Positions 48,448 through 62,600 of a DNA stretch of 64,000 nt are shown here, piece after piece. The stretch lies in assembly GCA_965637545.1 (NCBI GenBank), contig OZ281501.1, positions 6,882,001 to 6,946,000 of the forward strand. Reading direction: 5' to 3'. The stretch is from Phallusia mammillata (taxonomy: Eukaryota). The notes under the pieces were generated by a model that was not told the origin of the DNA, searched no databases, and saw nothing but the letters and a program-made list of their open reading frames with translations. A program made the position numbers and the translations under genes. The stretch's first letter is position 1; the number at the start of each line of letters is the position of its first letter.

Positions 48448-49614
48448 TCAAGGAACTCTGAGCCGAAGATTGTCACTGACAATTTTCCATGTTCCATCAA
48501 CATTTGTGAGGGTAAAGTTTTGTGTAAACGCTTTCAACGGATGTCCATCATATTTCACAGTACCACCAGCTGCCACCATAATAGTTTCTTTACCACTAGT
48601 AAACTGTGAGAGAACTGGCTGGGAATCAAACCAGTCTGTATGGTGAAAACATCCAGGCAGATCCTGTGTACATAAAAACATTAATTATTGGGTAAGTCTG
48701 TGCAAATCAAAAACATAACATTTTTTGGGATTGATGTTTTTAAAACCTGAAGATATTTTTGGATGTTGGCGTTGCCATCTACTCCATTTCCTTCCCAAAC
48801 CAGTTTAGCTGAGTCATGATACATTTTACCAATTTTCTACAAGAAGAAAAATTGGTTATAGACTCGGTAAACAACCGTGATATACCTTTTGTATACTGTT
48901 ATAATGTCAACAACTTGGTACAACCAGCTAACCTACATAGATTGAAGTTTTTTTAATATTTTATCAGTGAAATGTTATGTGAAATCTTTATGAATTTAAT
49001 CTGAAACAAAGGACATTAGTTAATCATGACATTACAAGAATCAAATGTAAACTCAATTTATTACAGGATTCAATTTTTTCGTTGGTCACAATTCCAAGTG
49101 GGTTTACCTTAAGTCATTACATGAGCACTACTAAAGTTGTTTAGCATAATCAATTGCACTTAGTTTGGCAAATTTGTCAGCAGACCTTACACACGCATTC
49201 GATGACAGACTTCTGAGTTGGTAAATTCACATTATTGTCCATAAGAAGTGATTCCAATAATTTAACAACAAAGCCTTGGCCCTAACTTTAGTCACAAAAA
49301 TCAATCACTTTGATATAACTTAGACAAGAGGGGTAAATGGCTTAGAACAACTTGTGTATGGATGTATAACACAATTAATTACATTTACAGAAACAAAAAC
49401 CCAAAAATGATTACAAAGAATGCCTCTTTAATTAACGTTAGTACATTGTGATTGTTGTTAACAACTCAATATAATAGGCAAAGCAAAAACAGCCAAACTA
49501 CAAAGTACAAGTTAAACTTACATGTCGACTTTTGTCATAGGTTTCATAAAATAGATTGCAAAATTTGGTTCCTGCTTCCACAGCTTGTTCAATCTGCAAC
49601 TTTGTTTCGCCCAT
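48448..49614 (-). CDS. NXT1: NTF2-related export protein (p15), 132 aa, 3 exons
   Basis: Exons 49522-49614, 48747-48836, 48448-48663, all phase 0: MGETKLQIEQAVEAGTKFCNLFYETYDKSRH / KIGKMYHDSAKLVWEGNGVDG / DLPG..DSQPV..FTQNFTLT..TWKIVSDNLR. Matches the NXT1/2 pattern (LVWNGNAVSG, WKIASDCFR). Confidence 0.9.
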
Positions 49615-50394: not shown

Positions 50395-51951
50395 CGACGA
50401 AATTGATAATGTTAGCTACACTTGCTATGTACAATGCTTAAAACATAATGTTTATCTTATTTTTGTCTTACAAGCAAGAAAAAAAAACGTACGAGAAAGA
50501 GTCTGCTAAACGCCTTTCCCTTACAAGTTTTACTGATAAGGTTGTTATCGCAACCGTGAGAAATAAATATAAATCACACATATACATTTTTATGTATTAA
50601 ACGAAGCATTTGTGCAGCGGAACATTCGTTAGCTTCATGCAAGAAGCGTTTGAAGAAAATAAAGCGTTGGCCCGAGAGCATAAAAAATGTGCATGAAAGT
50701 AAACTGAAATGAGTGTTGCAACGTATGATGTGGTTTGCAGAAAAATGTACAGTGTTAATCTTATAATCGTAGCTCTTCCATTACACAAGAAAAAGTACTG
50801 CATGTGTTTGCAAAATATTAAGACCTGTTTTTTGAAGAATGGCATGTCTGTTTTACGGACAACCATTATAAAATATCCTGTTGCAGTTTTTACAAAACAT
50901 TGCTTGGTCTACCAGCCGTACAAGAAGTGTTAAATTCTCAAACGCCAATAACGGCACGGCATATACAATTGACATTGAATGTGGTCGCAGTTACGGTAGA
51001 AGTACGGATAGTTGTTGCTTCTCAAGGGAATGCATACCCTAAAACAGAAGTGTGTTATAAATGACAGCTATCATATCGGTTTGTCATTGTAGCCTACAAC
51101 AACAATTTGTGATAAAAAAATATACGTTAAAGCATATCTCTAAAACTGAGTCCCAGTTAATACTTTTTTGGGTTTGTGTAACCTAATCTAGGCTACCCCC
51201 AATGACCATCATACAATATCACTATTATTACATTTTGTGCACTACGTTACATTTTAAGTATCTAAACAATTCGATTTTTGCATTTCTTGTCTTAGCTATA
51301 GTTTGGAAGGGTACTTTTGTCCTATTCTCTTGAGAATTGAAATCCAGTTTAAATAACTACATTCAAATCTATGTTCTTTTACTGGTAAAAATTGTGGTGC
51401 AAGGGAGAAAACAAATTGGTCTAAAGATAGAGCACTTTACCCAGGCGACTAACTGTCTGACTTGGCAAGACGCAAGTCAGTCACCTTATAACCTGTTGGT
51501 AGCATCCAGGGTTGCGTAACTGGTTGAAATTATCCGAACACTAAATTACGTGTCGCTAACAATCTTGAACTTAGATTAAAACACCTTTTGTACAAATTCG
51601 TTAAGTGTCATGGTCCGTTCATTACAAAAAAATATGACGCATTTTGTCGATCTTTGTGTCCAATGTACGTTTTTGTCATCAGGGTGTGTTGCTACATTGG
51701 GCGTATCACACAATTTGTGGAATGTGAAACGCCTAACACGACTAAAATGTGAAAAGGCATGTTTTTGCATTGAACAAACATTAAATTGTGAATAAAATTA
51801 TAATACAACAATTGTAAAAGTCAAAAAGGGAAATTTCAAAATGGTTATAGTGGCTATACATAATTGTCTACGTGCAAGGTCTAGTTATCATTGAACTAGG
51901 CGCCGTTATCATACTGCTGGGTATTTTCATGCAATCCGTGACAACATAGGT

Positions 51952-52269
51952 TAGTGGTTCTCAACTCGCTTTTGTCCATTGACCACCAGTTCAAGAATGT
52001 CGTGGACCAGTCTATTGGCCAGAAAGGTTAAATATAGCATCCAAAACAGGCATATTGGCTTGAAATATATTTCTTCCGTACAAAATTTCGAGAAGTGATA
52101 TCAAACACTTGACAGCTATAACAATAAATATCCAATAACTTGCATTACCTATTTTCGTACTGAATATTCAATAATGTACATGCAACTATTTTCAGTTGAT
52201 TACCAAATATAATAACATCCTGTGGACCACCCAAAAAAGCCATCATGGACAACCAGTTAAGAACCACTG
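51952..52269. mobile_element. hAT (Buster-like) MITE
   Basis: Ends tagtggttctcaac / gttaagaaccactg, TSD acataggt / acataggc (7 of 8). Confidence 0.8.
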
Positions 52270-52409
52270 ACATAGGCCATTAAATGTAAAAACAAGAACT
52301 TACTTGGTGCAAGCCAAATAAGATTGCTCACACTCGTTGCAACAGCCCCGCCCATGGTCGGATATTGCCCATTCTCGACTGTCTTGTTCAGAGTCAATGG
52401 GAGAAGGAT

Positions 52410-52464
52410 TCTCCTCCTCCTCTTCTTCTCCCCCCTCTTCCTCTTCTTCTTCTTCTTCCTCCTC
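52410..52464 (+). repeat. CTC/CTT trinucleotide-like microsatellite
   Basis: Pure pyrimidine ctc/ctt run. Confidence 0.9.
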
Positions 52465-52575
52465 AAGGTCTGCTTGACGTCTCTGTGGTCAAGTATAAGT
52501 TGACATGTAAACATTGTTTTAAGGCACTATTATAGGGCTGGCTTGACTAGTAAGTAATATGCACTTGCTACTAGG

Positions 52576-52903
52576 CAGGGTTGACATACCGTCCTTATTT
52601 CTAAGAATTGTCCTTGTTTTTGGCCGGAGTTCTTATTTTGTCTTGTTTTAACAATTACAAGGAACAAACTTAGTGAAATAACAGTCAAATCCTTGCTACA
52701 TGGAAAGTAGGCCTGAAACGTCGTAACCTAGGCCTGAAATGCCGTGACATGAACAAAACTTTGTCTACGGACAAGGAGATGCTGGAACAGATATTTTTCT
52801 TGTATAAATGCAAAGATTTGTTTCAAAATGTTTGTTTAGTTTTGTATGAAAATTTAATTTTTCGGTTGTCCTTATTTTGGCGTTTATGTCGATGACAACC
52901 CTG
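52576..52903. mobile_element. hAT-like MITE
   Basis: Ends cagggttgaca / tgacaaccctg, gtccttatt subterminal repeats, TSD ctactagg / cttatagg (6 of 8). Confidence 0.75.
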
Positions 52904-53195
52904 CTTATAGGGCATGAAGAAAAAGCGACCACAACAAAAACTTCTTTGACCGAATTGTCAGCAATGTCTTAGTTTTAAAGTCGATTTTTTTCTGTTGAAA
53001 CTGGGTCTTCTTCTTCTCTGGGATGGTAAATAATGCTATAAATACATCCATATGTTAAGTTTTTGGATAAAGAACCGCTGGTTTAATGGAAAGACTTTTC
53101 ACGTTGTTTACAAAGGCTGCTATAGGTTGGAATCCAAAATAAGCACTACCATACTATACTATAGCGTTGTGTATATAAGTGTCTTACGTTTAGCG

Positions 53196-53583
53196 CAGCG
53201 GTTCCCAACTTTTTGTTGCCGTGACCCCTTCATTACATTCATAACATTTGCCAAGTTGCGGTGACCCCAAGGATAAAATTAGTAGGGTATAGGCTACAAT
53301 AAAGCTATAAATATTAAAGACCCACCCCTGCGGCAGTTACTATAGTTGATATAATAATGAACAAACGATGGAGGGATTGTATGGGCACTTTTCTTTTGTA
53401 TTCTATACACTTTTCTTTGGTAATCTATTGTTAAATTTATTGTAGACCATAATTCTTAATGTTACTGCGTTTTTTCTCAAAAATGAAGTGGTCCATCCAT
53501 GCCCTAAAACGAGTTGGGAGCCGCTACCGTAGGCGACCCCAGGCAAATTGTCAAGCGACCCCAGTTGGGGTTGGGAACCGCTG
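53196..53583. mobile_element. hAT (Buster-like) MITE
   Basis: TIR cagcggttcccaac / gttgggaaccgctg, perfect TSD GTTTAGCG. Confidence 0.92.
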
Positions 53584-54448
53584 GTTTAGCGGCTAGACTT
53601 TGTCCTAGATTTCTCCCCAATTTAGTCGATTCGAACAGCACTGAATTAGCTTCACGAGTGATTTGGTACTGCATGTTTAATTCGATCTTCATATTGCATG
53701 TAGACACGAATATTTTAAACTGTCGGGATGTCTGTTTATATGTCGATAATCCTTTTGGAATTATTTCTACGAATCTATTGAATTGCTGCTGTACTTCGGT
53801 ATTTTATTATTTAACCGGCAAACCTGTATACTTGACGTTGGTTAATCGTTAACCAACTTTTACATTATGTAGTCACAACCCTAGCTCTAAATCGAGAAGG
53901 GTTGTACAGTTTGATTTAACATTGCGAATATTGTACTGTTTATTGACTCTTTACATATATGTCTGGAATACACTTGTTGCGTATCGCATCCACCAAACTG
54001 TCAGGACTGGTTGCTTGGTTAGTAGTGACAGTGACTTGCCGTTTCGGTAAAATATTTAGCGGCTAAACGGCGTTCTGATAACGGAAAGGTGTCATAAGTA
54101 TCGGCCCAATCATAAATCTCTAATCTTCGCATTTTCTAGATAATCTTTGCAGTACTTTGTCTCAGCGATGTTTTGTATTATGTTTCACAGCTATGACGGT
54201 ATTAACAAACAACGTACTGTTCCGGTAAGAAAATTAAAATCGCTCAGATTGGTACGGCCAGTTTGTGACAATGTTTAGCACAGTTTTCATAAGCCGTTTT
54301 TACAAACAAAAATATATTAAGGAACACTACACTGACTTGAAAAGTATTTTGATCGAAAACATAACAGCTTGTGTTTTGAAGTAACACGTCGTATTAGTGA
54401 CGTTTCAACGTCTGTTGAAGACGTGATGCAAAGCCTTTTTCGCTGTCG

Positions 54449-57020
54449 TTACCAGAATAAGGTCACAACAACACTACAATTGCAATGCTGTTCAACATGT
54501 CCGACTCTAAACGATTCGTAAAGTAACATATATTTCCGTACCTTACGATCGGGGTATTCATCTTTGGTTTCATCATAATCCACGTCAATAACCTCTTCAA
54601 TGAAATCGTTTTCGTCTTCATTCATGTCACCATACTCTGGTCCAGGAACAAAATCCATCTTCCACGGGGTGAGCTGGTAGATTGCTAAACCTTCACATTT
54701 CACCCTGATTGGTGCCGGAAGTGACGAAGGACTCACGGGCAGTTTACGGTTCTCTTCCCAAATGACGTCATCCATCACAACTGGCATATTTGCTAGCTGT
54801 GAGAGGAAACTTGTCAAGATTCAATGGAAATGTTTCTAAAACACTTGGCTGGTAGAAGTTCAAACCAATGTTTTCTCACTTAGAAACAAACTTTAGCAAA
54901 ACGTAACTGTATGTTTCACAGTTTTAATAAGGATGCATTAATCCTAATGGACGTAAAAAAGCGAAATATGCAATATGTTTAAACGTTAATATATGGGTTT
55001 CTTTATCTGATGTTTTGTTTGTCCTACCTGGTAAAAATGCACGTGCCATTATCGGTGATATAAAAATGTCGGCTTTTTTGGCAATGTGGGCAAATAAACT
55101 CTCCTCGACAACTTTTGAACACATATTTGAACCAACAAATATTTAGCTCTTCCAGAAGTCTTTATAAAAGACTTAGTCTTTATTCCAGACTGCTGGAAGA
55201 GCTAAAACTTTGTTGATACATTATGCCTGGCAGCAACAGTTTATTCACAAATTTGAACATTTAGTTTTAGAAAAATGATGTAGGCCTATCGAGGTTTCAA
55301 GACTAAAACTTCGCACCATTGCAAAATTTGACTTACGTTGGTTTCATTCATAATTCTGTCCATGATTTCTTGTCGCGGAAAGACTGGAGGGGCGGAATAG
55401 CCGTACATCCTGTCATCACGAATTAAGCAATGTACTCCATCATCTTCACCAACGATAACAGCGGTTACTTCGTTCTGTGGAATAACAACTTTGTCAAAGA
55501 TCAAAAATTTGCATAAAACGATCAATGATTTTAATTCAAAACCGTGCGTTGTATTGAACTTTGAAAGATTTTTTAAATTGTCCGGTAAAACTAAGAAAAC
55601 GGCAAAACTTCAGCAGTTCGTCGGAAAATACTCACAGCAAACCGTCAGGTTTAAAAAAAACAGACGAAGATTTTGCGATTTTACTTATAGTGACAGTTTT
55701 GTGTTTACTCGATTATGGCGGGTGGCGATATATTCGTACCATTCCGTCGCTAATGGAGTCAACAAATAGACTTGGTGAAATGGTTCCACATCGCCTAAGT
55801 ACAGTGTGTGCTGCGCGGTTAAACTCGATGGTTCCAGTTGATCTTTGGCCGTTGACTATCATGTGATATTCGTATTTGTTTTTCTCCTAAAAATATTTTT
55901 GGTAACCATGAAGCAAGATAAAGTTTACAAAAACACAGCAAATACTGACAAGGGAAATTGCTTTGCTACCTGAAACCTGAACAAGCGTCAAAAATGAGAA
56001 TGTGAGGGTTTTTCTTTAGAAAGAAGTTGAATAAGTAAGGCCAGGGTTTTAACACGGATTCGGACAGATTGGGGTTTCAGGTCAAGCAATACGAGTCGAC
56101 CGTTGTCTGACTTTAGAATAAGCCAGTTTTGTGTCCCAATTTCATCTTGATCAGTCTGACTTTCGGGCCTGATTAGGGATTCAGTTAAATAACTTTTCGG
56201 GTTCGGACCGGCAAATCTGTATCGCTTTAAGTCAGTGGTTCCCAAACTTTTTCACATTTTTTTCAAAACGGACCGCCATTATTTCGAGTGCTCGCGGTCC
56301 TTAAGCTTAAATGTGTATTTCATAAAAACAAAAGTTGATTGCAGGATTTTAGCTAGTTATGCAAAATTGCGCAAAAAAATCATCCAAAAACAGCTTGTGA
56401 CATCACAGACAAGACAAAAAGCATTACGATTGTGCGTGAACAATTGCATTTTTGATAGTTGTCATGCAATAAAGGCTATTGTTTGGCAATGGAGACAGTC
56501 GATTCTAAATTTTAATTTAAACTTATTTAGTGGCACAAATGAGAATTATAGAATTACTTCAACCGCTTCGCGGTCCCCCCAAAATTGCCTCACGGACCCC
56601 TAAAGGACCGCGGACCCCAGTTTGGGAACCGCTGCTTTAAGTTAAGGCTAGACTGCATACACATGTAAAGGTTTGCGTTAAAGATACTCCAGTTTTACGA
56701 ATTTCATATTTGCATACAATGGAAGTATTTTAAGGTTTAACTTACCACTGCATGAACGTGCAAGAAGAAGAACGCCAAAAATCCAGTCAGAAATAAAACC
56801 AAAAATGTGCTTAACAGCAGAAGACATGCCCTTCTTTGTTGTACCTTATTTGCAACCTAAAACAGAACCAGTGTTATGCCAATATTTACTTTACGAACCA
56901 ACATACATACCTAGGTTAATAGTGTATGATTTGCCTTACCTTTTTGGGAGGTGATGCGAGTAAAACCTCTGTAGAACCATTTTCCTTCACCCACAAATCA
57001 ACTTTGTTGCTTGCAACCAT
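54449..57020 (-). CDS. BRICHOS-domain type II membrane precursor (~274 aa), 5 exons
   Basis: Exons 56940-57020, 56746-56856, 55740-55886, 55337-55474, 54449-54796, all phase 0. Short cytosolic N-terminus, TM (CLLLLSTFLVLFLTGFLAFFFL), BRICHOS-type motifs VDSISDG...DDGVHCLIR and PAPIRVKCEGLAIYQL, acidic spacer, RKVR, then a 28-aa tail. The C-terminal end may be spliced differently (see findings). Confidence 0.8.
56233..56634. mobile_element. hAT (Buster-like) MITE in a BRICHOS gene intron
   Basis: TIR cagtggttcccaaact / agtttgggaaccgctg, perfect TSD CTTTAAGT. Confidence 0.92.
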
Positions 57021-59677
57021 TTTAAATAGTAATTGTTAACCTAAAATCGAGGTTAAGCAAAATACTAGAAACAAAAATACGCTACTAAAATAATACACAA
57101 TTTAAATAGTTAGATCCTACTAGTGCACTAATGCACACAGCAGACGTCTGCAAAGCGTGCACAACCTTGCTAAGGACAAAAACACCGCGAGTAATCAAGT
57201 TATTTCGCTCTATCGACCGGTGTTTTCGCAGATAGGCTATGTGACATCAAACCAACAGCACTTTCGCTCAAACACGGTCTTTTTGTATGTACAAGCTAAA
57301 TTAAAGTCCTTTCTACTTACAGCCAATTCAAGTAATGTGTTTAATCAAGTCAAGAAAACAAATAGTTTTCTTTCGGCGCAGTGCGTGGTAATTTCCCAGC
57401 AGGGCTGTAAACTCGTACAGTCACGTTTGTTACTGGATGGGGCTGGCGTTGAAAAATGTCAGCTGTAAGACATGATCCAGAAGCTGTCTTTATCAGCATT
57501 GTTAAGATTCATGACCTAACATAGTTTTTAAAGCAAATTTTTGTTATCCTTTTATTCCTATAATACTATAGCAACAAAGGGATCGATTGGTATTATTGAA
57601 TATGCAAAGAGAAAACAGAATTTGCAGTTGTGTTCGTGTAAAAGTGCTATTACTGCGAATTTTACGCTTATTTCTCTCTCCTTTGTTGTCAAATAAACGT
57701 TTCTAGAACTTCTTTGTTCTAAATTACAAAAAATAGAACAACAAAGTCTATATTTTTTCAGCAATACTCTTCACAAACAAACTTCAATCCTGTTAAAACT
57801 GTGTCTAAGCTGTTACCTGTTCCACTGTAAAGCAAACAAAACTAAGAGCTGTCAAGTTAGCAGTTCATTGTGCTAGGTATCGAAGAAAGGAACCTGATAT
57901 ACTTTCTGTCTTGCTCTCAACAATGGCTCTCTCCCTTTGCTTTAAACCACCTCACCGATACACCCTCTTGCTTGCTTCACTTCGCAGCATACAAGCAACG
58001 TCAAGGTTCAATGATCGTAACCATTAAGAAGTCGTTGACGCAGAAACTGTTGAAAGGCCGTGTCTGTTTCGGACGGCGAGGAAATTGTCTTTTTAACGTC
58101 GGTTGTCATTTTTGCAAAAGTTTCGGGCAACACCCTTTGCAACAAACTTTGTTTTTTGAGCTAGTGTCTGTATGTTTTATTGATATAGGCCTACCTTTAA
58201 GAGCTAAAACATCTTTGTTGGTATTTCACGGGTTAGCATCAAGGGCTGAAACACCAGACCAGTAAGTTGCCATGTTTGACTTTAGAAATAAGGACTATCT
58301 ATTTGTCGGTAAACATCACAACAGTATACCATTAGACCCACTAATTTTTACGCTTTAATTCCATACAAACCACATTCTTTGAACGCATTTGCCGTTTATC
58401 TAAAAAAGAAGCTGTTCTATTACATTATGGCCCTATTTCAAGTGTAATAAAATTAAAAGGATTTGAAAGGGTTATTTGTACTACAGTATCGCCTACTCAG
58501 CGACGTGGTTTCGTGTTTTCTAATACTCTCACTCGTACCTACGTTTATATGTGGATCAACTGGGCTGAATAGACGTGAGAATAACATTGCCAGACAACAC
58601 CGTGTATGGCTGTCGTGTAACGCCGTAATAAAATAACAAAAACTACGTAAAATGGTCATAGAAAAAATACTGGCACATTATTGTTCGACGTGTGCGCTAC
58701 GGACCTTTGGGCAACAGCGAAAAAAATAGGTTTTCTTTTAACAAATCATTAATAGCGGAACAGATATGGCACATTTGAGTATAGAAAACAGGTAACACGA
58801 TCGAATAACGTAGGGTGTACACAAACTCGAACCAAAAGGCAAGTGAAAAAATATTTTCTGTACAAGTTTATAAAACATATTATTTATCCGATAAAGCAAT
58901 CACATACTAAAAGCAATTATTTAACTTTACTGCAAGATAACCATGTATATATCTGCTTTTTACTGTAATAAACTATATGCATAACCATGTACAAAAGTAT
59001 GAATACTGTAAGTGTATCTTATAGTGCAAGAATATAATTTTGCTTTTTCATCATAAACAAGTCCGCATGTGAACAAAAATACAAATATATAGGCAAAACA
59101 TGCTGTAGACCATATTTCAAAAGGCTTGTAGGCTACCAAGCACAAGAAAGACACAAGATCATAATAAATGCATTGTCATGCAAAAAGACATGTCCCTGCA
59201 CAAAACGCTTCACAATTTTTAGTGAGTATCAAAAACAAATTGTAAAAATTCCTGCACTAAACTAGTACTTGGAAATAGGTTTCTTCGCCTACATGGCGTA
59301 TCAAAAATAACTCATACTGCGATTTTTCTACTTGAAAGTGCAATTATGCCGATTTTACAAACCGTTGCAAACCAAAAAACCCTTAAAGAGCGAAAATAGT
59401 GAGTATGGTGCAGAATTGGCTTAGCATTTTTTTTACACAAGTGCAATTTAGTAAAAGGCTTTTACGCCTGTACCAAAAACACCTATATTTTTAAAAATGT
59501 TGGTAGAGTACCATGTAAACAATGGGCAGCGCTAAAGAAATGCGTATCTTTGAAAACCTGTGTTTGGCAATAAAGAGTAAACTTGTACAAAGGGAGCTAA
59601 GAAATATTGCATAAAAATAACATAATACTGACGAGGCTTAAAAGGCAGCCGAAAAGAATCGATATTTAGGCCCAACA

Positions 59678-62600
59678 TCACAAACTTGGCACTTCGTATG
59701 GTGTTTCGTCGTTCGACGTCAAAGGCTCGTCGTCAGGGGTAACCCCTTCGGGCGGTTCCGTCATGGGATCGTCGGTGAGCAGGAGCGCGTGTTCGGATGA
59801 GCGCTCTGTAGTTCCACTTTCAAAGTAAATTCGGTCGTATCCTAAAGTCACGCGGTCTCCGTTCGCCGTCTACATAAATTTAAAAATATGAAAGCAGTAG
59901 CTTTAAATTTTGTGATGAGTTTTAAAAAGTTCGGTGGCGCATGTTTTGATTTAATTTTGGATAGAACCTTTTGAAAACTCGGGTAAAACCGAAATGTAGT
60001 AATGTATGAAATTTAGGCCTAAAACTATACAACAGACTAATTTATCTACATGTAGTTAACTGATAAACGTCGTGTTTTTAGCAAACTAGGCCCAAATTAT
60101 GGTATTTGTCTTGAAAAGTAAAAAGCGAATTTACTTAATGGAGGAAACGTATTCATACTGGGATCAGCCCTGAAGCGTCGATGCAGACCAGCGATCACGG
60201 CATACATATCAATAAATCGTAGTACGCCAGGCCTACAAGTGCAGCATACAAGGCAGGCAAACGGTGCTTGTGATTCGACTTTCGGCGGTTTCTCCACTGA
60301 GCCTGTGTAGTTGGTATAGAGCGCGAGTCCCGGAAAGACTCCAGTCGTGGGTTCGAATCCCACCGCAGGCTAGATTTTTCTAGTCTATGCCTTGCCATAT
60401 GAGATTGCTTGGGAGACCAGCTGATTCGGTACAACGCCTTTATAGGCCTGGCGTACTACGATTTACTTAATAGAAGCATGCACGTAAGAACTGTAGTTGT
60501 GCCCAGCAAAATACTAGAACGATTTGTCTAGGATAGGTCAGATTTTGTCCAAATGATTCTTTTAAATCACAAAAAAGGGCTAAAGAAGCAAAAAAGAAAC
60601 AACCCTTTAGTAAAAGCGACCTAAATAGGATGTCAAAACGACGGTATACGCAAATACCATTGCCACAAGGGTTACATCATACCTGGCATAAAGTACAGTC
60701 TGCTTTAATTTGGGGTATTGACCACAAAGTTTAGGATCATCGTCATACCTGGTCGTCGTCACTGGCTTCGATTTCAGTGACAACTTCGTCTTCATAACCG
60801 TTGTCGAGATGTAAAAGTCCATTTGAATCGCTTGTTGCATCCCCATTGTTCAGTTTAGTGGATTCGCCGCTTAGGCTTGTTACCTCGCTGGCATTCAACT
60901 CACTGTATCTCATGTTTTCGACTTCGTTCCGAGAGGGCGACATGAAGTGACGGAATCTATAAAGTAGCAAAAAGACGCATTTTATCTATGTGTACCAGTG
61001 TAACTTCGATAAAGAGCGCAAATTTTTCAAAATTGTAAAAAAAACGTTCATGTACATTGTATGTTGGATAACATAAAATGTGGATCAACTCCAAACGCTT
61101 AGACACCGTTAACCGTTCAGTATTCGCTTTTAAACAATAAAGTATCTTTGACTATACTTACCCCAAACCTTTGGTCTTCTTTCTGTAGACGAACCACAAG
61201 ACCACTCCGACGATCAAAATGAACAGCACCGTTACTATGACGACGGGCGCAACTGGAGACGCTCCAGCAGCTTCGCCTGTCACGTGACAAGTCTTGCCGC
61301 TCGGACAGCCGCATTTGCCAGCAACGCAAGTTTCACCGTCTGTGCACGTCACTCCCACGCATGCGCAGTGGAGCATTTTCGCACGCCCTGATGACGTCAC
61401 TTGCGGGCAGCGGCACGAGTAGGACTCACCGTCGTTCAGACACAACGTGGTCAGGTTCGAGTTGCAGCGAGTACATCTACCCGATTTTTTGCTAAGTTGC
61501 ATAGCAATAGAGGTTTGTGGGACTCCGTCGGCTATAGCAATGGCGGGCGGATTCCCTAAACCGTAATCAACCCATTCTAGGCGTGAGAGTTGCGCGAATG
61601 GGGCAACCCGCTTCGGGCCGCTGTTAAAAAGAAACGGGACAGTTTGGTGGGATTTGCTCAGTCGTTGGGTGGCGCTCGAGGGTAGCGTGTGCGCCAGTTT
61701 GTGGATACGCAGTACACGGAAAGTCAGCGAAGTTGTGGCAAATATGTAGTCCCCGAAGAGAGCAATGGTTTTCGGCCAGATGTGGATATCAAACTGCCGA
61801 ACAAGAACCTGACCAGTGCCGTCAAAGTCCGAACTCCAGATTGACCTGGATTTGCTATCGACCCAGTATATCCTGGAGGCAGGTTCATCCACAACTACAC
61901 TATTGGGCCATTGCATGTTTTTAGATCGTATAGTGATGTGGTTGGCACCACGTTGCCCGTTCGTTGGGAGACGGAGAATTGAAGGTTTGATGACGTCAGT
62001 ACCTCCGTCAGCGACGAACATGAATCCTGTGGTCAGAAATAATCAAGTCAGTTGCTTACACGTACTTAAAAAGTTAGCATACAAACTTTCTGCAATCTTA
62101 TAAAAATATCGACTAAAGAACGTTAAAGGGTTATGGTATATTCAAAGAATCAGATTAAGTGAAAAACTTTCCTTTAAAAGCATGAGTATTTTACTTTACA
62201 CAAAATAATGTCATTTTATTACTAGGACTAATCTTACCACATTATTACATTTGAAAAAGGTGGACAGCAAAGTTATAGCCGTAACCAACCTGTTTGTATG
62301 CTTAGCGCGACATCTAAGGGCCAGTTAATCATCGAGTTTTCACTGTTGTATATCGCAAAGTGTTCGAGCGGTCGTTTGGAAGTCTGACTTTTTTGTATGG
62401 GCATGATATGTACAGACCGCGTCCCAAGATCGCTCCAATATAGATTTGAACCAACCCAGTCGAAGTCAAGACCGCTGGGCCGATGTTTGGCTGGCAAGCG
62501 AAGAAGCTAAAAGAAAATGATTTAATAACGAAATGCAGTTAATAAAAGCATAAAGCTAATAAATAATAGCAGGCAGTGTACATGGCTATAGCAGAGTTGT

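What the first reader, a model, noticed from the sequence alone, without database searches (positions are those of the whole stretch)
54317..57020. BRICHOS precursor with acidic spacer, dibasic site and a short beta-rich C-terminal peptide: candidate chaperone-released antimicrobial or amyloid-prone peptide
Seen: TM + BRICHOS-like domain, then a very acidic spacer (EYGDMNEDENDFIEEVIDVDYDETKDEYPD), then RKVR, then KYMLLYESFRVGHVEQHCNCSVVVTLFW*. That tail looks like two hydrophobic beta-strands around a polar turn with two Cys. Established: BRICHOS proproteins (Bri2/ITM2B, proSP-C, chondromodulin, annelid arenicin-type AMP precursors) release a beta-prone C-terminal client by proprotein convertase cleavage, and anionic propieces often neutralise AMPs. 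Inference: this is a tunicate-type peptide precursor whose mature peptide I do not recognise. A donor after DRK (gtacgg) and an acceptor at 54443 would instead give DRKRKR-LCITSSTDVETSLIRRVTSKHKLLCFRSKYFSSQCSVP* (stop 54317), a cationic 38-mer. One BRICHOS domain might therefore serve two swappable clients.
Basis: partly seen in the sequence, partly recalled or inferred. Interest (0 to 1): 0.72.

Follow-up and report, generated by a model that had tools for sequence, protein, structure and literature searches.

The report
Chondromodulin-like BRICHOS precursor gene

Summary
The gene model is wrong at its 3' end. Spliced transcript contigs from three studies confirm exons 1-5. They continue with sequence that matches 52482-52453 exactly, not the tail and not the proposed acceptor at 54443.

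The corrected model has 7 exons (57020..50930, minus strand) and gives 339 aa. It has a cytoplasmic N-terminus, a signal-anchor helix and a BRICHOS-like region (Asp, Cys129, Cys193). An acidic linker follows, then R-K-R-R across the exon 5/6 junction, a poly-Glu stretch and a 52-aa C-terminal domain with eight Cys.

Under one offset, five of the six Cys positions published for mature human chondromodulin-I coincide with ours, and the sixth is off by one. This occurred in 41 of 200,000 shuffles.

The 30-codon tail is no longer than chance allows (P about 0.12-0.20). Ascidian chondromodulin genes are already known as Ciona notochord markers.

No Pfam or BRICHOS HMM test of the whole domain was possible, because the spliced protein has no reference. 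The exon 6/7 junction is inferred. Verdict: a new member of a known family, of low interest.

The parts
56940..57020 (-). Exon 1 (coding part): Met1-Lys27, cytoplasmic N-terminus. The 5' UTR reaches at least 57080.
   Evidence: ATG, donor AAG|gtaagg. Joint 56938/56854 is seen in X1, X2 and X9, and contigs reach 57066-57080.
56746..56856 (-). Exon 2: residues 28-64. It holds the signal-anchor helix (about residues 38-60, 56758-56826), preceded by a net +5 flank.
   Evidence: hydropathy 2.5; flank charge. The e1/e2 joint is in three runs; the e2/e3 joint is in X2 only.
55740..55886 (-). Exon 3: residues 65-113, the first part of the BRICHOS-like region. It holds Asp107 and Asp111, the candidates for the conserved Asp.
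   Evidence: The joint 55740/55474 is seen in X1, X2 and X9.
55337..55474 (-). Exon 4: residues 114-159, the middle of the BRICHOS-like region, with Cys129 and the only luminal N-X-T sequon (Asn156).
   Evidence: The joint 55337/54796 is seen in X1, X2 and X9.
54542..54796 (-). Exon 5: residues 160-244. It holds the end of the BRICHOS-like region (Cys193 in ..VKCEGLAIYQLTP..), the acidic linker (54551-54640) and Arg243-Lys244, the first half of the convertase site.
   Evidence: All three transcript contig sets end their match exactly at 54542, at the donor AAG|gtacgg..
54449..54541 (-). This is the 5' end of intron 5 read in frame, not an exon.
   Evidence: Zero transcript-contig depth here, while the DNA run X7 covers it. 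Its length is within chance.
54317..54443 (-). It lies inside intron 5.
   Evidence: No joint to 54443 in any run and no transcript depth over it.
52304..52482 (-). Exon 6: residues 245-304 (last codon split). It holds Arg245-Arg246, which complete R-K-R-R, then Gln247 and a poly-Glu hydrophilic stretch (52345-52476), then the first four Cys (CC-x2-C-x6-C).
   Evidence: The loose ends of X1, X2 and X9 at 54542 match 52453-52482 with 0 mismatches, a unique match in the window. Acceptor ..accacag| and donor AA|gtaagt.
50930..51038 (-). Exon 7 (coding part): residues 304-339 and the TAA stop. It holds the last four Cys, a Tyr/Phe-rich loop and the short tail ..MPCRYWRLRI.
   Evidence: Inferred from the acceptor ttttag|, frame continuity, and restoration of the published chondromodulin-I Cys spacing across the junction. 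The junction was not seen in reads. The X2 contig length (1383 nt) fits this model with a 3' UTR of about 317 nt.
56227..56640 (.). A MITE-like element in intron 2. It is not part of the gene product.
   Evidence: 22-nt terminal inverted repeats. Depth is 1e5-1e6 in DNA run X7, against about 270-350 for the flanks.

Best explanation
A seven-exon, minus-strand gene (about 57080 to about 50613; coding sequence 57020..50930) encodes a 339-residue chondromodulin/tenomodulin-family precursor.

Inferred mechanism:
1. The single hydrophobic helix, preceded by a positively charged flank, anchors the protein as type II, with the C-terminal 280 residues in the ER lumen.
2. The BRICHOS-like region (about residues 70-205, probably with a Cys129-Cys193 disulfide) acts as an intramolecular chaperone while the hydrophobic Cys-rich end folds.
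3. A furin-type convertase cuts after R243-K-R-R246 in the late secretory pathway.
4. This releases a 93-residue secreted protein. Its first half is a very acidic poly-Glu segment, standing where vertebrate chondromodulin-I has its glycosylated 'domain 1'. Its second half is a basic 52-residue domain with eight Cys (four disulfides), an aromatic-rich disulfide-closed loop and a short Trp-containing tail.
5. By analogy with Ciona, where the chondromodulin gene is a notochord marker, it is probably an extracellular-matrix factor of embryonic tissues.

Shown here: exons 1-6, their junctions, and expression.
Inferred: the exon 6/7 junction, topology, BRICHOS fold, cleavage, disulfides and function.
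For: - Spliced contigs from three studies give joints e1/e2, e3/e4 and e4/e5 in all three, and e2/e3 in X2. These joints are absent from DNA run X7.
- All three contig sets leave the window stretch at 54542. Their continuation matches 52453-52482 uniquely.
- All seven exons have canonical borders and one continuous frame of 339 codons.
- Hydropathy maximum is 2.5 at residues 38-57, with a net +5 N-flank.
- The only R-x-[KR]-R motif is RKRR at 243-246.
- The eight C-terminal Cys are at 291, 292, 295, 302, 306, 321, 326 and 332. Minus 223 these are 68, 69, 72, 79, 83, 98, 103 and 109. The Cys published for mature human ChM-I are 68, 79, 83, 99, 103 and 109 (PMC3492907). The five-position pattern arose in 41 of 200,000 shuffles of the last 60 residues.
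- Family features in the literature match: a type II precursor of 334 aa, BRICHOS at about 90-201, a furin site, a hydrophilic domain in exon 6, a Cys-rich hydrophobic end in exon 7, eight Cys forming four disulfides, and an aromatic-rich ring (PMC5390337; PMC13237185; PMC3492907).
- From memory only: human ChM-I reads ..DH..CC.EC..SY..C.K.C.PL...YP.PY...C...C...MPC.WW..RI.., which aligns to ours at about 24 of 54 positions. My recalled residues agree with every residue label in PMC3492907.
Against: - No sequence-search tool connected this protein to any known protein. Pfam and NCBIfam on single exons found nothing.
- phmmer of exon 5 against 1.84 billion representatives gave only one spurious bacterial repeat protein.
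- PDB phmmer with exons 3, 4, 5 and 7 found nothing. A word search with the exon 7 ORF found nothing.
- The BRICHOS assignment therefore rests on position, length, one Asp and two Cys.
- The exon 6/7 junction was not observed. If intron 6 were retained, the protein would stop one codon later (..ACTK*) with only four Cys.
- The tail after the last Cys is 7 residues and basic, not the 11-residue hydrophobic tail of vertebrates.
- There is no N-glycosylation sequon in the released part.
- Cleavage at RKRR is not shown.
Confidence: 0.85

Rival explanations
1. One reading: exon 5 is the last exon, or intron 5 is retained in some tissue or stage. The protein then ends ..DRKVR-KYMLLYESFRVGHVEQHCNCSVVVTLFW, and a short beta-hairpin-like peptide is released after RKVR, as in Bri2 or arenicin-type precursors.
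For: The frame stays open for 30 codons after the donor. R-K-V-R is a minimal R-x-x-R site, and the tail has two Cys and hydrophobic runs. Contigs drop rare variants, so a minor retained-intron form cannot be excluded (note).
Against: There is no transcript-contig depth over 54449-54541 in three studies, and all three contig sets splice at 54542. The open frame is within chance, at 0.12-0.20 per site. The spliced form restores a complete family-typical C-terminal domain. No conservation data could be obtained.
Confidence: 0.04
2. One reading: the donor at 54542 is joined to an acceptor at 54443, giving DRK-RKR-LCITSS..QCSVP*, a cationic 38-mer as an alternative client.
For: The donor is real, and an AG precedes 54443.
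Against: No such joint was found in any of the three transcript sets, and there is no depth over 54317-54443. The implied intron would be only 98 nt, and the polypyrimidine tract is poor.
Confidence: 0.02
3. The gene model is right, but the protein behaves like tenomodulin rather than chondromodulin-I. It stays a membrane protein with its Cys-rich end displayed on the cell surface, and RKRR is not used or is used only partially.
For: Tenomodulin shares the architecture, and whether its end is released is unclear (PMC5390337). Cleavage was not tested here.
Against: Tenomodulin lacks a furin motif. This protein has an optimal R-x-K/R-R site in an acidic, probably disordered linker, at the same place as RERR of chondromodulin-I.
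Confidence: 0.09

Closest known systems
Vertebrate chondromodulin-I (CNMD/LECT1/Chm1) precursor
   Same: - A type II precursor of nearly the same length (334 vs 339 aa).
- A luminal BRICHOS-sized region at the same place (published 90-201; ours about 70-205).
- A furin-type site before a hydrophilic segment.
- Eight Cys at the C-terminus with matching spacing (68/79/83/103/109 coincide).
- An aromatic-rich disulfide-closed ring, and Met-Pro-Cys followed by Trp near the end.
- Seven exons, with the hydrophilic segment in exon 6 and the end in exon 7.
   Different: - The site is RKRR instead of RERR.
- The released part is 93 aa, not 120.
- Its first half is poly-Glu without an N-glycosylation sequon, instead of a glycosylated domain.
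- The ring has 16 members, not 17.
- The tail after the last Cys is 7 residues and basic, not 11 and hydrophobic.
- Four of the eight Cys are encoded in exon 6 here.
- No sequence-search hit was obtained.
Vertebrate tenomodulin (TNMD)
   Same: The same architecture and the same Cys-rich end. Its sixth Cys is also displaced (by four), showing that this position is the variable one in the family.
   Different: Tenomodulin has no furin motif. Ours has one, so in processing it looks like chondromodulin-I. A single invertebrate gene is probably co-orthologous to both (inference).
Ciona chondromodulin-1 (C. robusta KH.C13.35 / Cr-ChM-1; C. savignyi Cs-ChM-1)
   Same: An ascidian gene called the CNMD orthologue. 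It is a notochord-specific marker, and its 'mature' 110-aa C-terminal peptide has been expressed recombinantly (PMC8369891; PMC12662927; PMC5852487).
   Different: It is not the same gene copy or species. The Cs-ChM-1 primer and both Cr-ChM-1 guide sequences are absent from the window at up to 3 mismatches. The Cs primer implies a different C-terminus (..AHTNVIM*). No protein alignment could be made.
Bri2/ITM2B and annelid arenicin-type BRICHOS precursors
   Same: A membrane anchor, a BRICHOS-type region, a convertase site and a C-terminal released part (PMC9714404).
   Different: Those release a short (about 20-30 aa) hairpin directly after the site. Here the short tail is intronic, and the released part is a 93-aa two-part protein with four predicted disulfides.

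Membership tests
Chondromodulin-I / tenomodulin family | Type II membrane precursor of about 320-335 aa with a single N-terminal signal-anchor | tested here: met
   339 aa. There is one hydrophobic helix at residues 38-60 (KD 2.5), and the N-flank is net +5. Topology is inferred from the positive-inside rule.
Chondromodulin-I / tenomodulin family | C-terminal domain with eight Cys (four disulfides) at conserved positions | tested here: met
   Eight Cys lie in the last 49 residues. With one offset, five of the six published human positions coincide and the sixth is off by one. This arose in 41 of 200,000 shuffles. The disulfides themselves were not tested.
Chondromodulin-I / tenomodulin family | Aromatic-rich disulfide-closed ring and a hydrophobic Trp-containing C-terminal tail | tested here: inconclusive
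   The ring Cys306-Cys321 holds Y, Y, F and Y (met). The tail is RYWRLRI, 7 residues with one Trp and three Arg, so it is shorter and not hydrophobic.
Chondromodulin-I / tenomodulin family | Furin motif between BRICHOS and the released part (chondromodulin-I only; absent in tenomodulin) | tested here: met
   RKRR at 243-246 is the only R-x-[KR]-R in the protein. It is formed across the observed exon 5/6 junction. Cleavage was not tested.
Chondromodulin-I / tenomodulin family | Seven-exon gene, with the hydrophilic segment in exon 6 and the C-terminal end in exon 7 | tested here: met
   Seven coding exons. Exon 6 holds the poly-Glu segment and exon 7 the end, compared with PMC5390337. Exact intron positions in the human gene were not compared, and the exon 6/7 junction is inferred.
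Chondromodulin-I / tenomodulin family | Significant sequence similarity to known members | not testable with these tools
   The spliced protein has no reference and was not typed in. Single exons gave no hit. No CNMD, TNMD or Ciona sequence could be obtained. My by-eye alignment to human ChM-I is from memory.
BRICHOS domain (Pfam PF04089) | Match to the family HMM | tested here: inconclusive
   Exons 3, 4 and 5 scanned separately gave no Pfam family at E<=10. The domain is split over three exons, and the joined domain could not be submitted.
BRICHOS domain (Pfam PF04089) | One conserved Asp and two Cys that form a disulfide, in a luminal domain of about 100 aa after the anchor (PMC9627735) | tested here: met
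   Asp107 or Asp111, then Cys129 18-22 residues later, then Cys193 64 residues on. This is a weak test, since the pattern is loose.
Short-peptide BRICHOS precursors (Bri2, arenicin type) | A short beta-hairpin client encoded directly after the convertase site in the mRNA | tested here: not met
   The short tail lies in intron 5, and the transcripts splice to exon 6.

The most novel reading that the evidence does not exclude
Intron 5 is retained in some tissue or stage that the assembled contigs do not show. The same gene would then make both a chondromodulin-type protein and a Bri2-like precursor ending in the 30-residue two-Cys tail after RKVR: one BRICHOS domain serving two clients chosen by splicing.
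Probability: 0.04. Interest if true: 0.6.

Novelty: new member of a known kind. Interest (0 to 1): 0.2.

Why it matters
It matters mainly as a correction. An attractive 'new peptide' read from genomic continuity turns out to be an intron read in frame, and the real product belongs to a known family.

There is modest positive value too. It has, however, replaced the glycosylated segment with poly-glutamate and shortened the tail that matters for the anti-angiogenic potency of the human protein. That gives a natural variant for asking what the Cys-rich ring does in an animal without cartilage.

Tried and rejected
Searches that found nothing useful:
- Pfam and NCBIfam on each exon alone: nothing.
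- phmmer of exon 5 (85 aa) against 1.84 billion representatives: one hit, P0001. It is a 1625-aa bacterial repeat protein (BOF, InlB-type repeats) and was rejected as spurious.
- PDB phmmer with exons 3, 4, 5 and 7 at E<=10: nothing.
Repeated with the 40-aa ORF piece 50933-51052, it had no candidates.
- Word search with the neighbouring 287-aa ORF, to calibrate the database and the taxon: nothing.
- tblastn of the model against the window: no second copy.
- Tests for identity with the published Ciona genes, using the Cs-ChM-1 primer and two Cr-ChM-1 guide sequences: all absent.
Full report
**What is in the sequence.**
On the minus strand an ATG at 57020 opens five phase-0 exons with canonical GT..AG borders (57020-56940, 56856-56746, 55886-55740, 55474-55337, and 54796 onward). 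If exon 5 is read on through the genome, the frame stays open to a stop at 54451-54449. The letters are therefore confirmed.

**What is transcribed.**
The run search found runs holding about a quarter of the sampled words of 54200-57100, which is the share expected if only exons are present. It also found two runs holding 0.84-0.91 of them. I laid X1, X2 and X9 (three studies) and X7 (a DNA-like run) on 53800-57500.
- X7 covers everything, and its contigs do not skip the introns.
- X1, X2 and X9 skip 54797-55336 and 55475-55739 and join exon 1 to exon 2. X2 also joins exon 2 to exon 3. All of these joints have CT..AC ends on the + strand, that is GT..AG on the gene's strand.
- These are spliced transcripts, and they confirm exons 1-5.
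- All three contig sets stop matching at 54542, with at least 133-255 more letters that lie nowhere in the laid stretch. Transcript depth over 54449-54541 is nil.
- The 30 loose letters, reverse-complemented, occur once in the window at 52453-52482 with no mismatch. They sit directly behind an acceptor (..gaccacag|).

It joins to an exon 2 kb downstream, not to 54443.

**Corrected model.**
Exon 6 (52482-52304) ends at AA|gtaagt. If it were read on, the frame would stop at once (..ACTK*). The next good acceptor (ttttag| at 51039) opens exon 7 (51038-50930), which keeps the frame to a TAA. The result is 339 residues.

The length of the X2 contig (1383 nt, of which 778 nt run up to the exon 5 donor) fits exon 6, exon 7 and a 3' UTR of about 317 nt. 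It does not prove the last junction, which I could not lay.

**Anatomy.**
- Residues 1-37 are hydrophilic, and the last 15 have net charge +5.
- Residues 38-60 are the only strongly hydrophobic stretch (19-mer mean 2.5). This points to a type II signal-anchor.
- Residues about 70-205 hold Asp107/Asp111, Cys129, Cys193 and one N-E-T sequon.
- Across residues 212-281, 36 of 70 are Asp or Glu.
- Within that stretch, R243-K-R-R246 is the only R-x-[KR]-R in the protein. Its four codons straddle the observed exon 5/6 junction.
- After it come Gln247, a poly-Glu run, and a 52-residue basic end (pI 8.7) with eight Cys.

**What it is.**
The literature describes chondromodulin-I as follows (PMC5390337; PMC13237185):
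- a 334-residue type II precursor with a BRICHOS domain (residues 90-201 in the human protein);
- a furin motif, RERR;
- a released 120-residue part made of a hydrophilic domain (exon 6) and a hydrophobic end (exon 7);
- eight Cys in four disulfides.

PMC3492907 names Cys68, 79, 83, 99, 103 and 109 of the mature human protein. It also names a Cys83-Cys99 ring 'rich in aromatic residues' and a tail Trp111-Val120. It says that in tenomodulin seven Cys are conserved in place and one is shifted by four.

Our Cys are at 291, 292, 295, 302, 306, 321, 326 and 332. Subtracting 223 gives 68, 69, 72, 79, 83, 98, 103 and 109. Five of the six published positions coincide under one offset. The sixth, which is the one that also moves in tenomodulin, is off by one. 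Shuffling the last 60 residues while keeping all eight Cys reproduces the five-position pattern 41 times in 200,000. The ring Cys306-Cys321 carries Tyr, Tyr, Phe and Tyr.

Two of the matching positions (302 and 306) lie on either side of the inferred exon 6/7 junction. That is the best evidence I have for that junction.

From memory only, human chondromodulin-I shares about 24 of 54 aligned residues with this end: DH, CC.EC, SY, K.C.PL, YP.PY, MPC, W, RI. My recalled sequence agrees with every residue label printed in PMC3492907. It also has Cys131 and Cys193 in its BRICHOS part, against our 129 and 193. That is a lead, not a test.

**What could not be shown.**
- No search tool linked the protein to anything. 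Single exons give no Pfam or NCBIfam family.
- Exon 5 against 1.84 billion representatives gives one spurious bacterial protein.
- PDB searches with four exons give nothing, and the exon 7 ORF shares no words with any protein.
- The BRICHOS domain is split over exons 3-5 and the Cys-rich domain over exons 6-7. The joined sequences have no reference, so I did not submit them to Pfam, folding or fold search.
- BRICHOS membership therefore rests on position, size, one Asp and two Cys 64 residues apart. These are the only residues said to be conserved across the superfamily (PMC9627735).

The 30 sense codons after the donor are not remarkable in DNA that is 62% A+T. From composition P is 0.12 per donor and 0.53 for one of six donors. 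Empirically, 20% of GT[AG] sites on this strand run as far. The other five donors run 1 to 16 codons. Together with zero transcript cover and a complete family-typical end in the spliced form, I take the tail for intron. Assembled contigs drop rare forms, so a minor retained-intron isoform is not excluded, and I give it a few percent. The 54443 acceptor has no support at all.

**How it most likely works.**
This part is inferred from the family.
1. The protein is inserted as a type II membrane protein.
2. The BRICHOS-like region shields the aggregation-prone end during folding. BRICHOS proteins are 'pre-pro-proteins' processed 'usually by proprotein convertases' (PMC9714404).
3. A furin-type enzyme cuts after RKRR.
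4. A 93-residue protein is secreted, with an acidic poly-Glu half and a basic four-disulfide half.

It differs from the vertebrate protein in four ways: the glycosylated segment is replaced by poly-Glu with no sequon, the released part is shorter, the ring is one residue smaller, and the tail is short and basic.

**Known relatives and novelty.**
- Ascidian chondromodulin is already in the literature. KH.C13.35 is treated as the CNMD orthologue and a notochord-only marker in Ciona robusta (PMC8369891).
- Cr-ChM-1 has been edited in notochord cells (PMC12662927).
- A recombinant 110-aa C. savignyi peptide was tested on mammalian cells (PMC5852487).
- The published primer and guide sequences are absent from this window, so this is another species' gene.
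I did not test that.

This is a new member of a known kind.

**Surroundings.**
- Downstream on the same strand is an NTF2-domain gene (49614 to about 48451; Pfam NTF2 E 2e-5).
- Upstream is an exon with an LDL-receptor class B repeat, EGF-like Cys patterns and a membrane helix (61161-62021).
- Intron 2 holds a MITE-like element of very high copy number.
- Intron 4 holds a 46-nt palindrome that is also high-copy.

Noticed in passing
window 56227-56640 (intron 2): A MITE-like element of about 414 nt with 22-nt terminal inverted repeats (TTAAGTCAGTGGTTCCCAAACT / AGTTTGGGAACCGCTGCTTTAA). In DNA run X7 its depth is 1e5-1e6 against about 300 for the flanks, so there are thousands of copies in the genome. 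Pieces of it also turn up in the RNA-like runs.
   Followed up: partly
window 55128-55220 (intron 4): A near-perfect palindrome with 46-nt arms, 80% complementary and 1 nt apart. It coincides with a depth spike (about 64,000) in DNA run X7 and with contig breaks at 55218-55247. It is a second high-copy element or a hairpin-forming repeat.
   Followed up: partly
window 48451-49614, minus strand: The downstream neighbour is an NTF2-domain gene. Its first exon starts MGETKLQIEQAVEAGTKFCNLFYETYDKSRH, and a later exon hits Pfam NTF2 (E 2.3e-5). It may be an NXT/p15-type export factor.
   Followed up: partly
window 61161-62021, minus strand: A 287-aa open exon with an LDL-receptor class B (YWTD) repeat (Pfam E 3.7e-7), Cys-rich EGF-like stretches, a membrane helix and a short basic tail. 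It is the last exon of an LDLR-family or nidogen-like receptor. A word search found no relative within the length window.
   Followed up: partly
window 52400-52465 (exon 6): The poly-Glu run is encoded by mixed GAA/GAG/GGG triplets (about 22 codons). This is a likely site of length polymorphism. None was reported, but the run lay outside the stretch that was laid.
   Followed up: no
window 57095-57110: A TATTTAAA motif lies about 20-30 nt upstream of the furthest 5' end of the transcript contigs (57080). It is a plausible TATA box. No spliced-leader loose end was reported at the 5' end.
   Followed up: no
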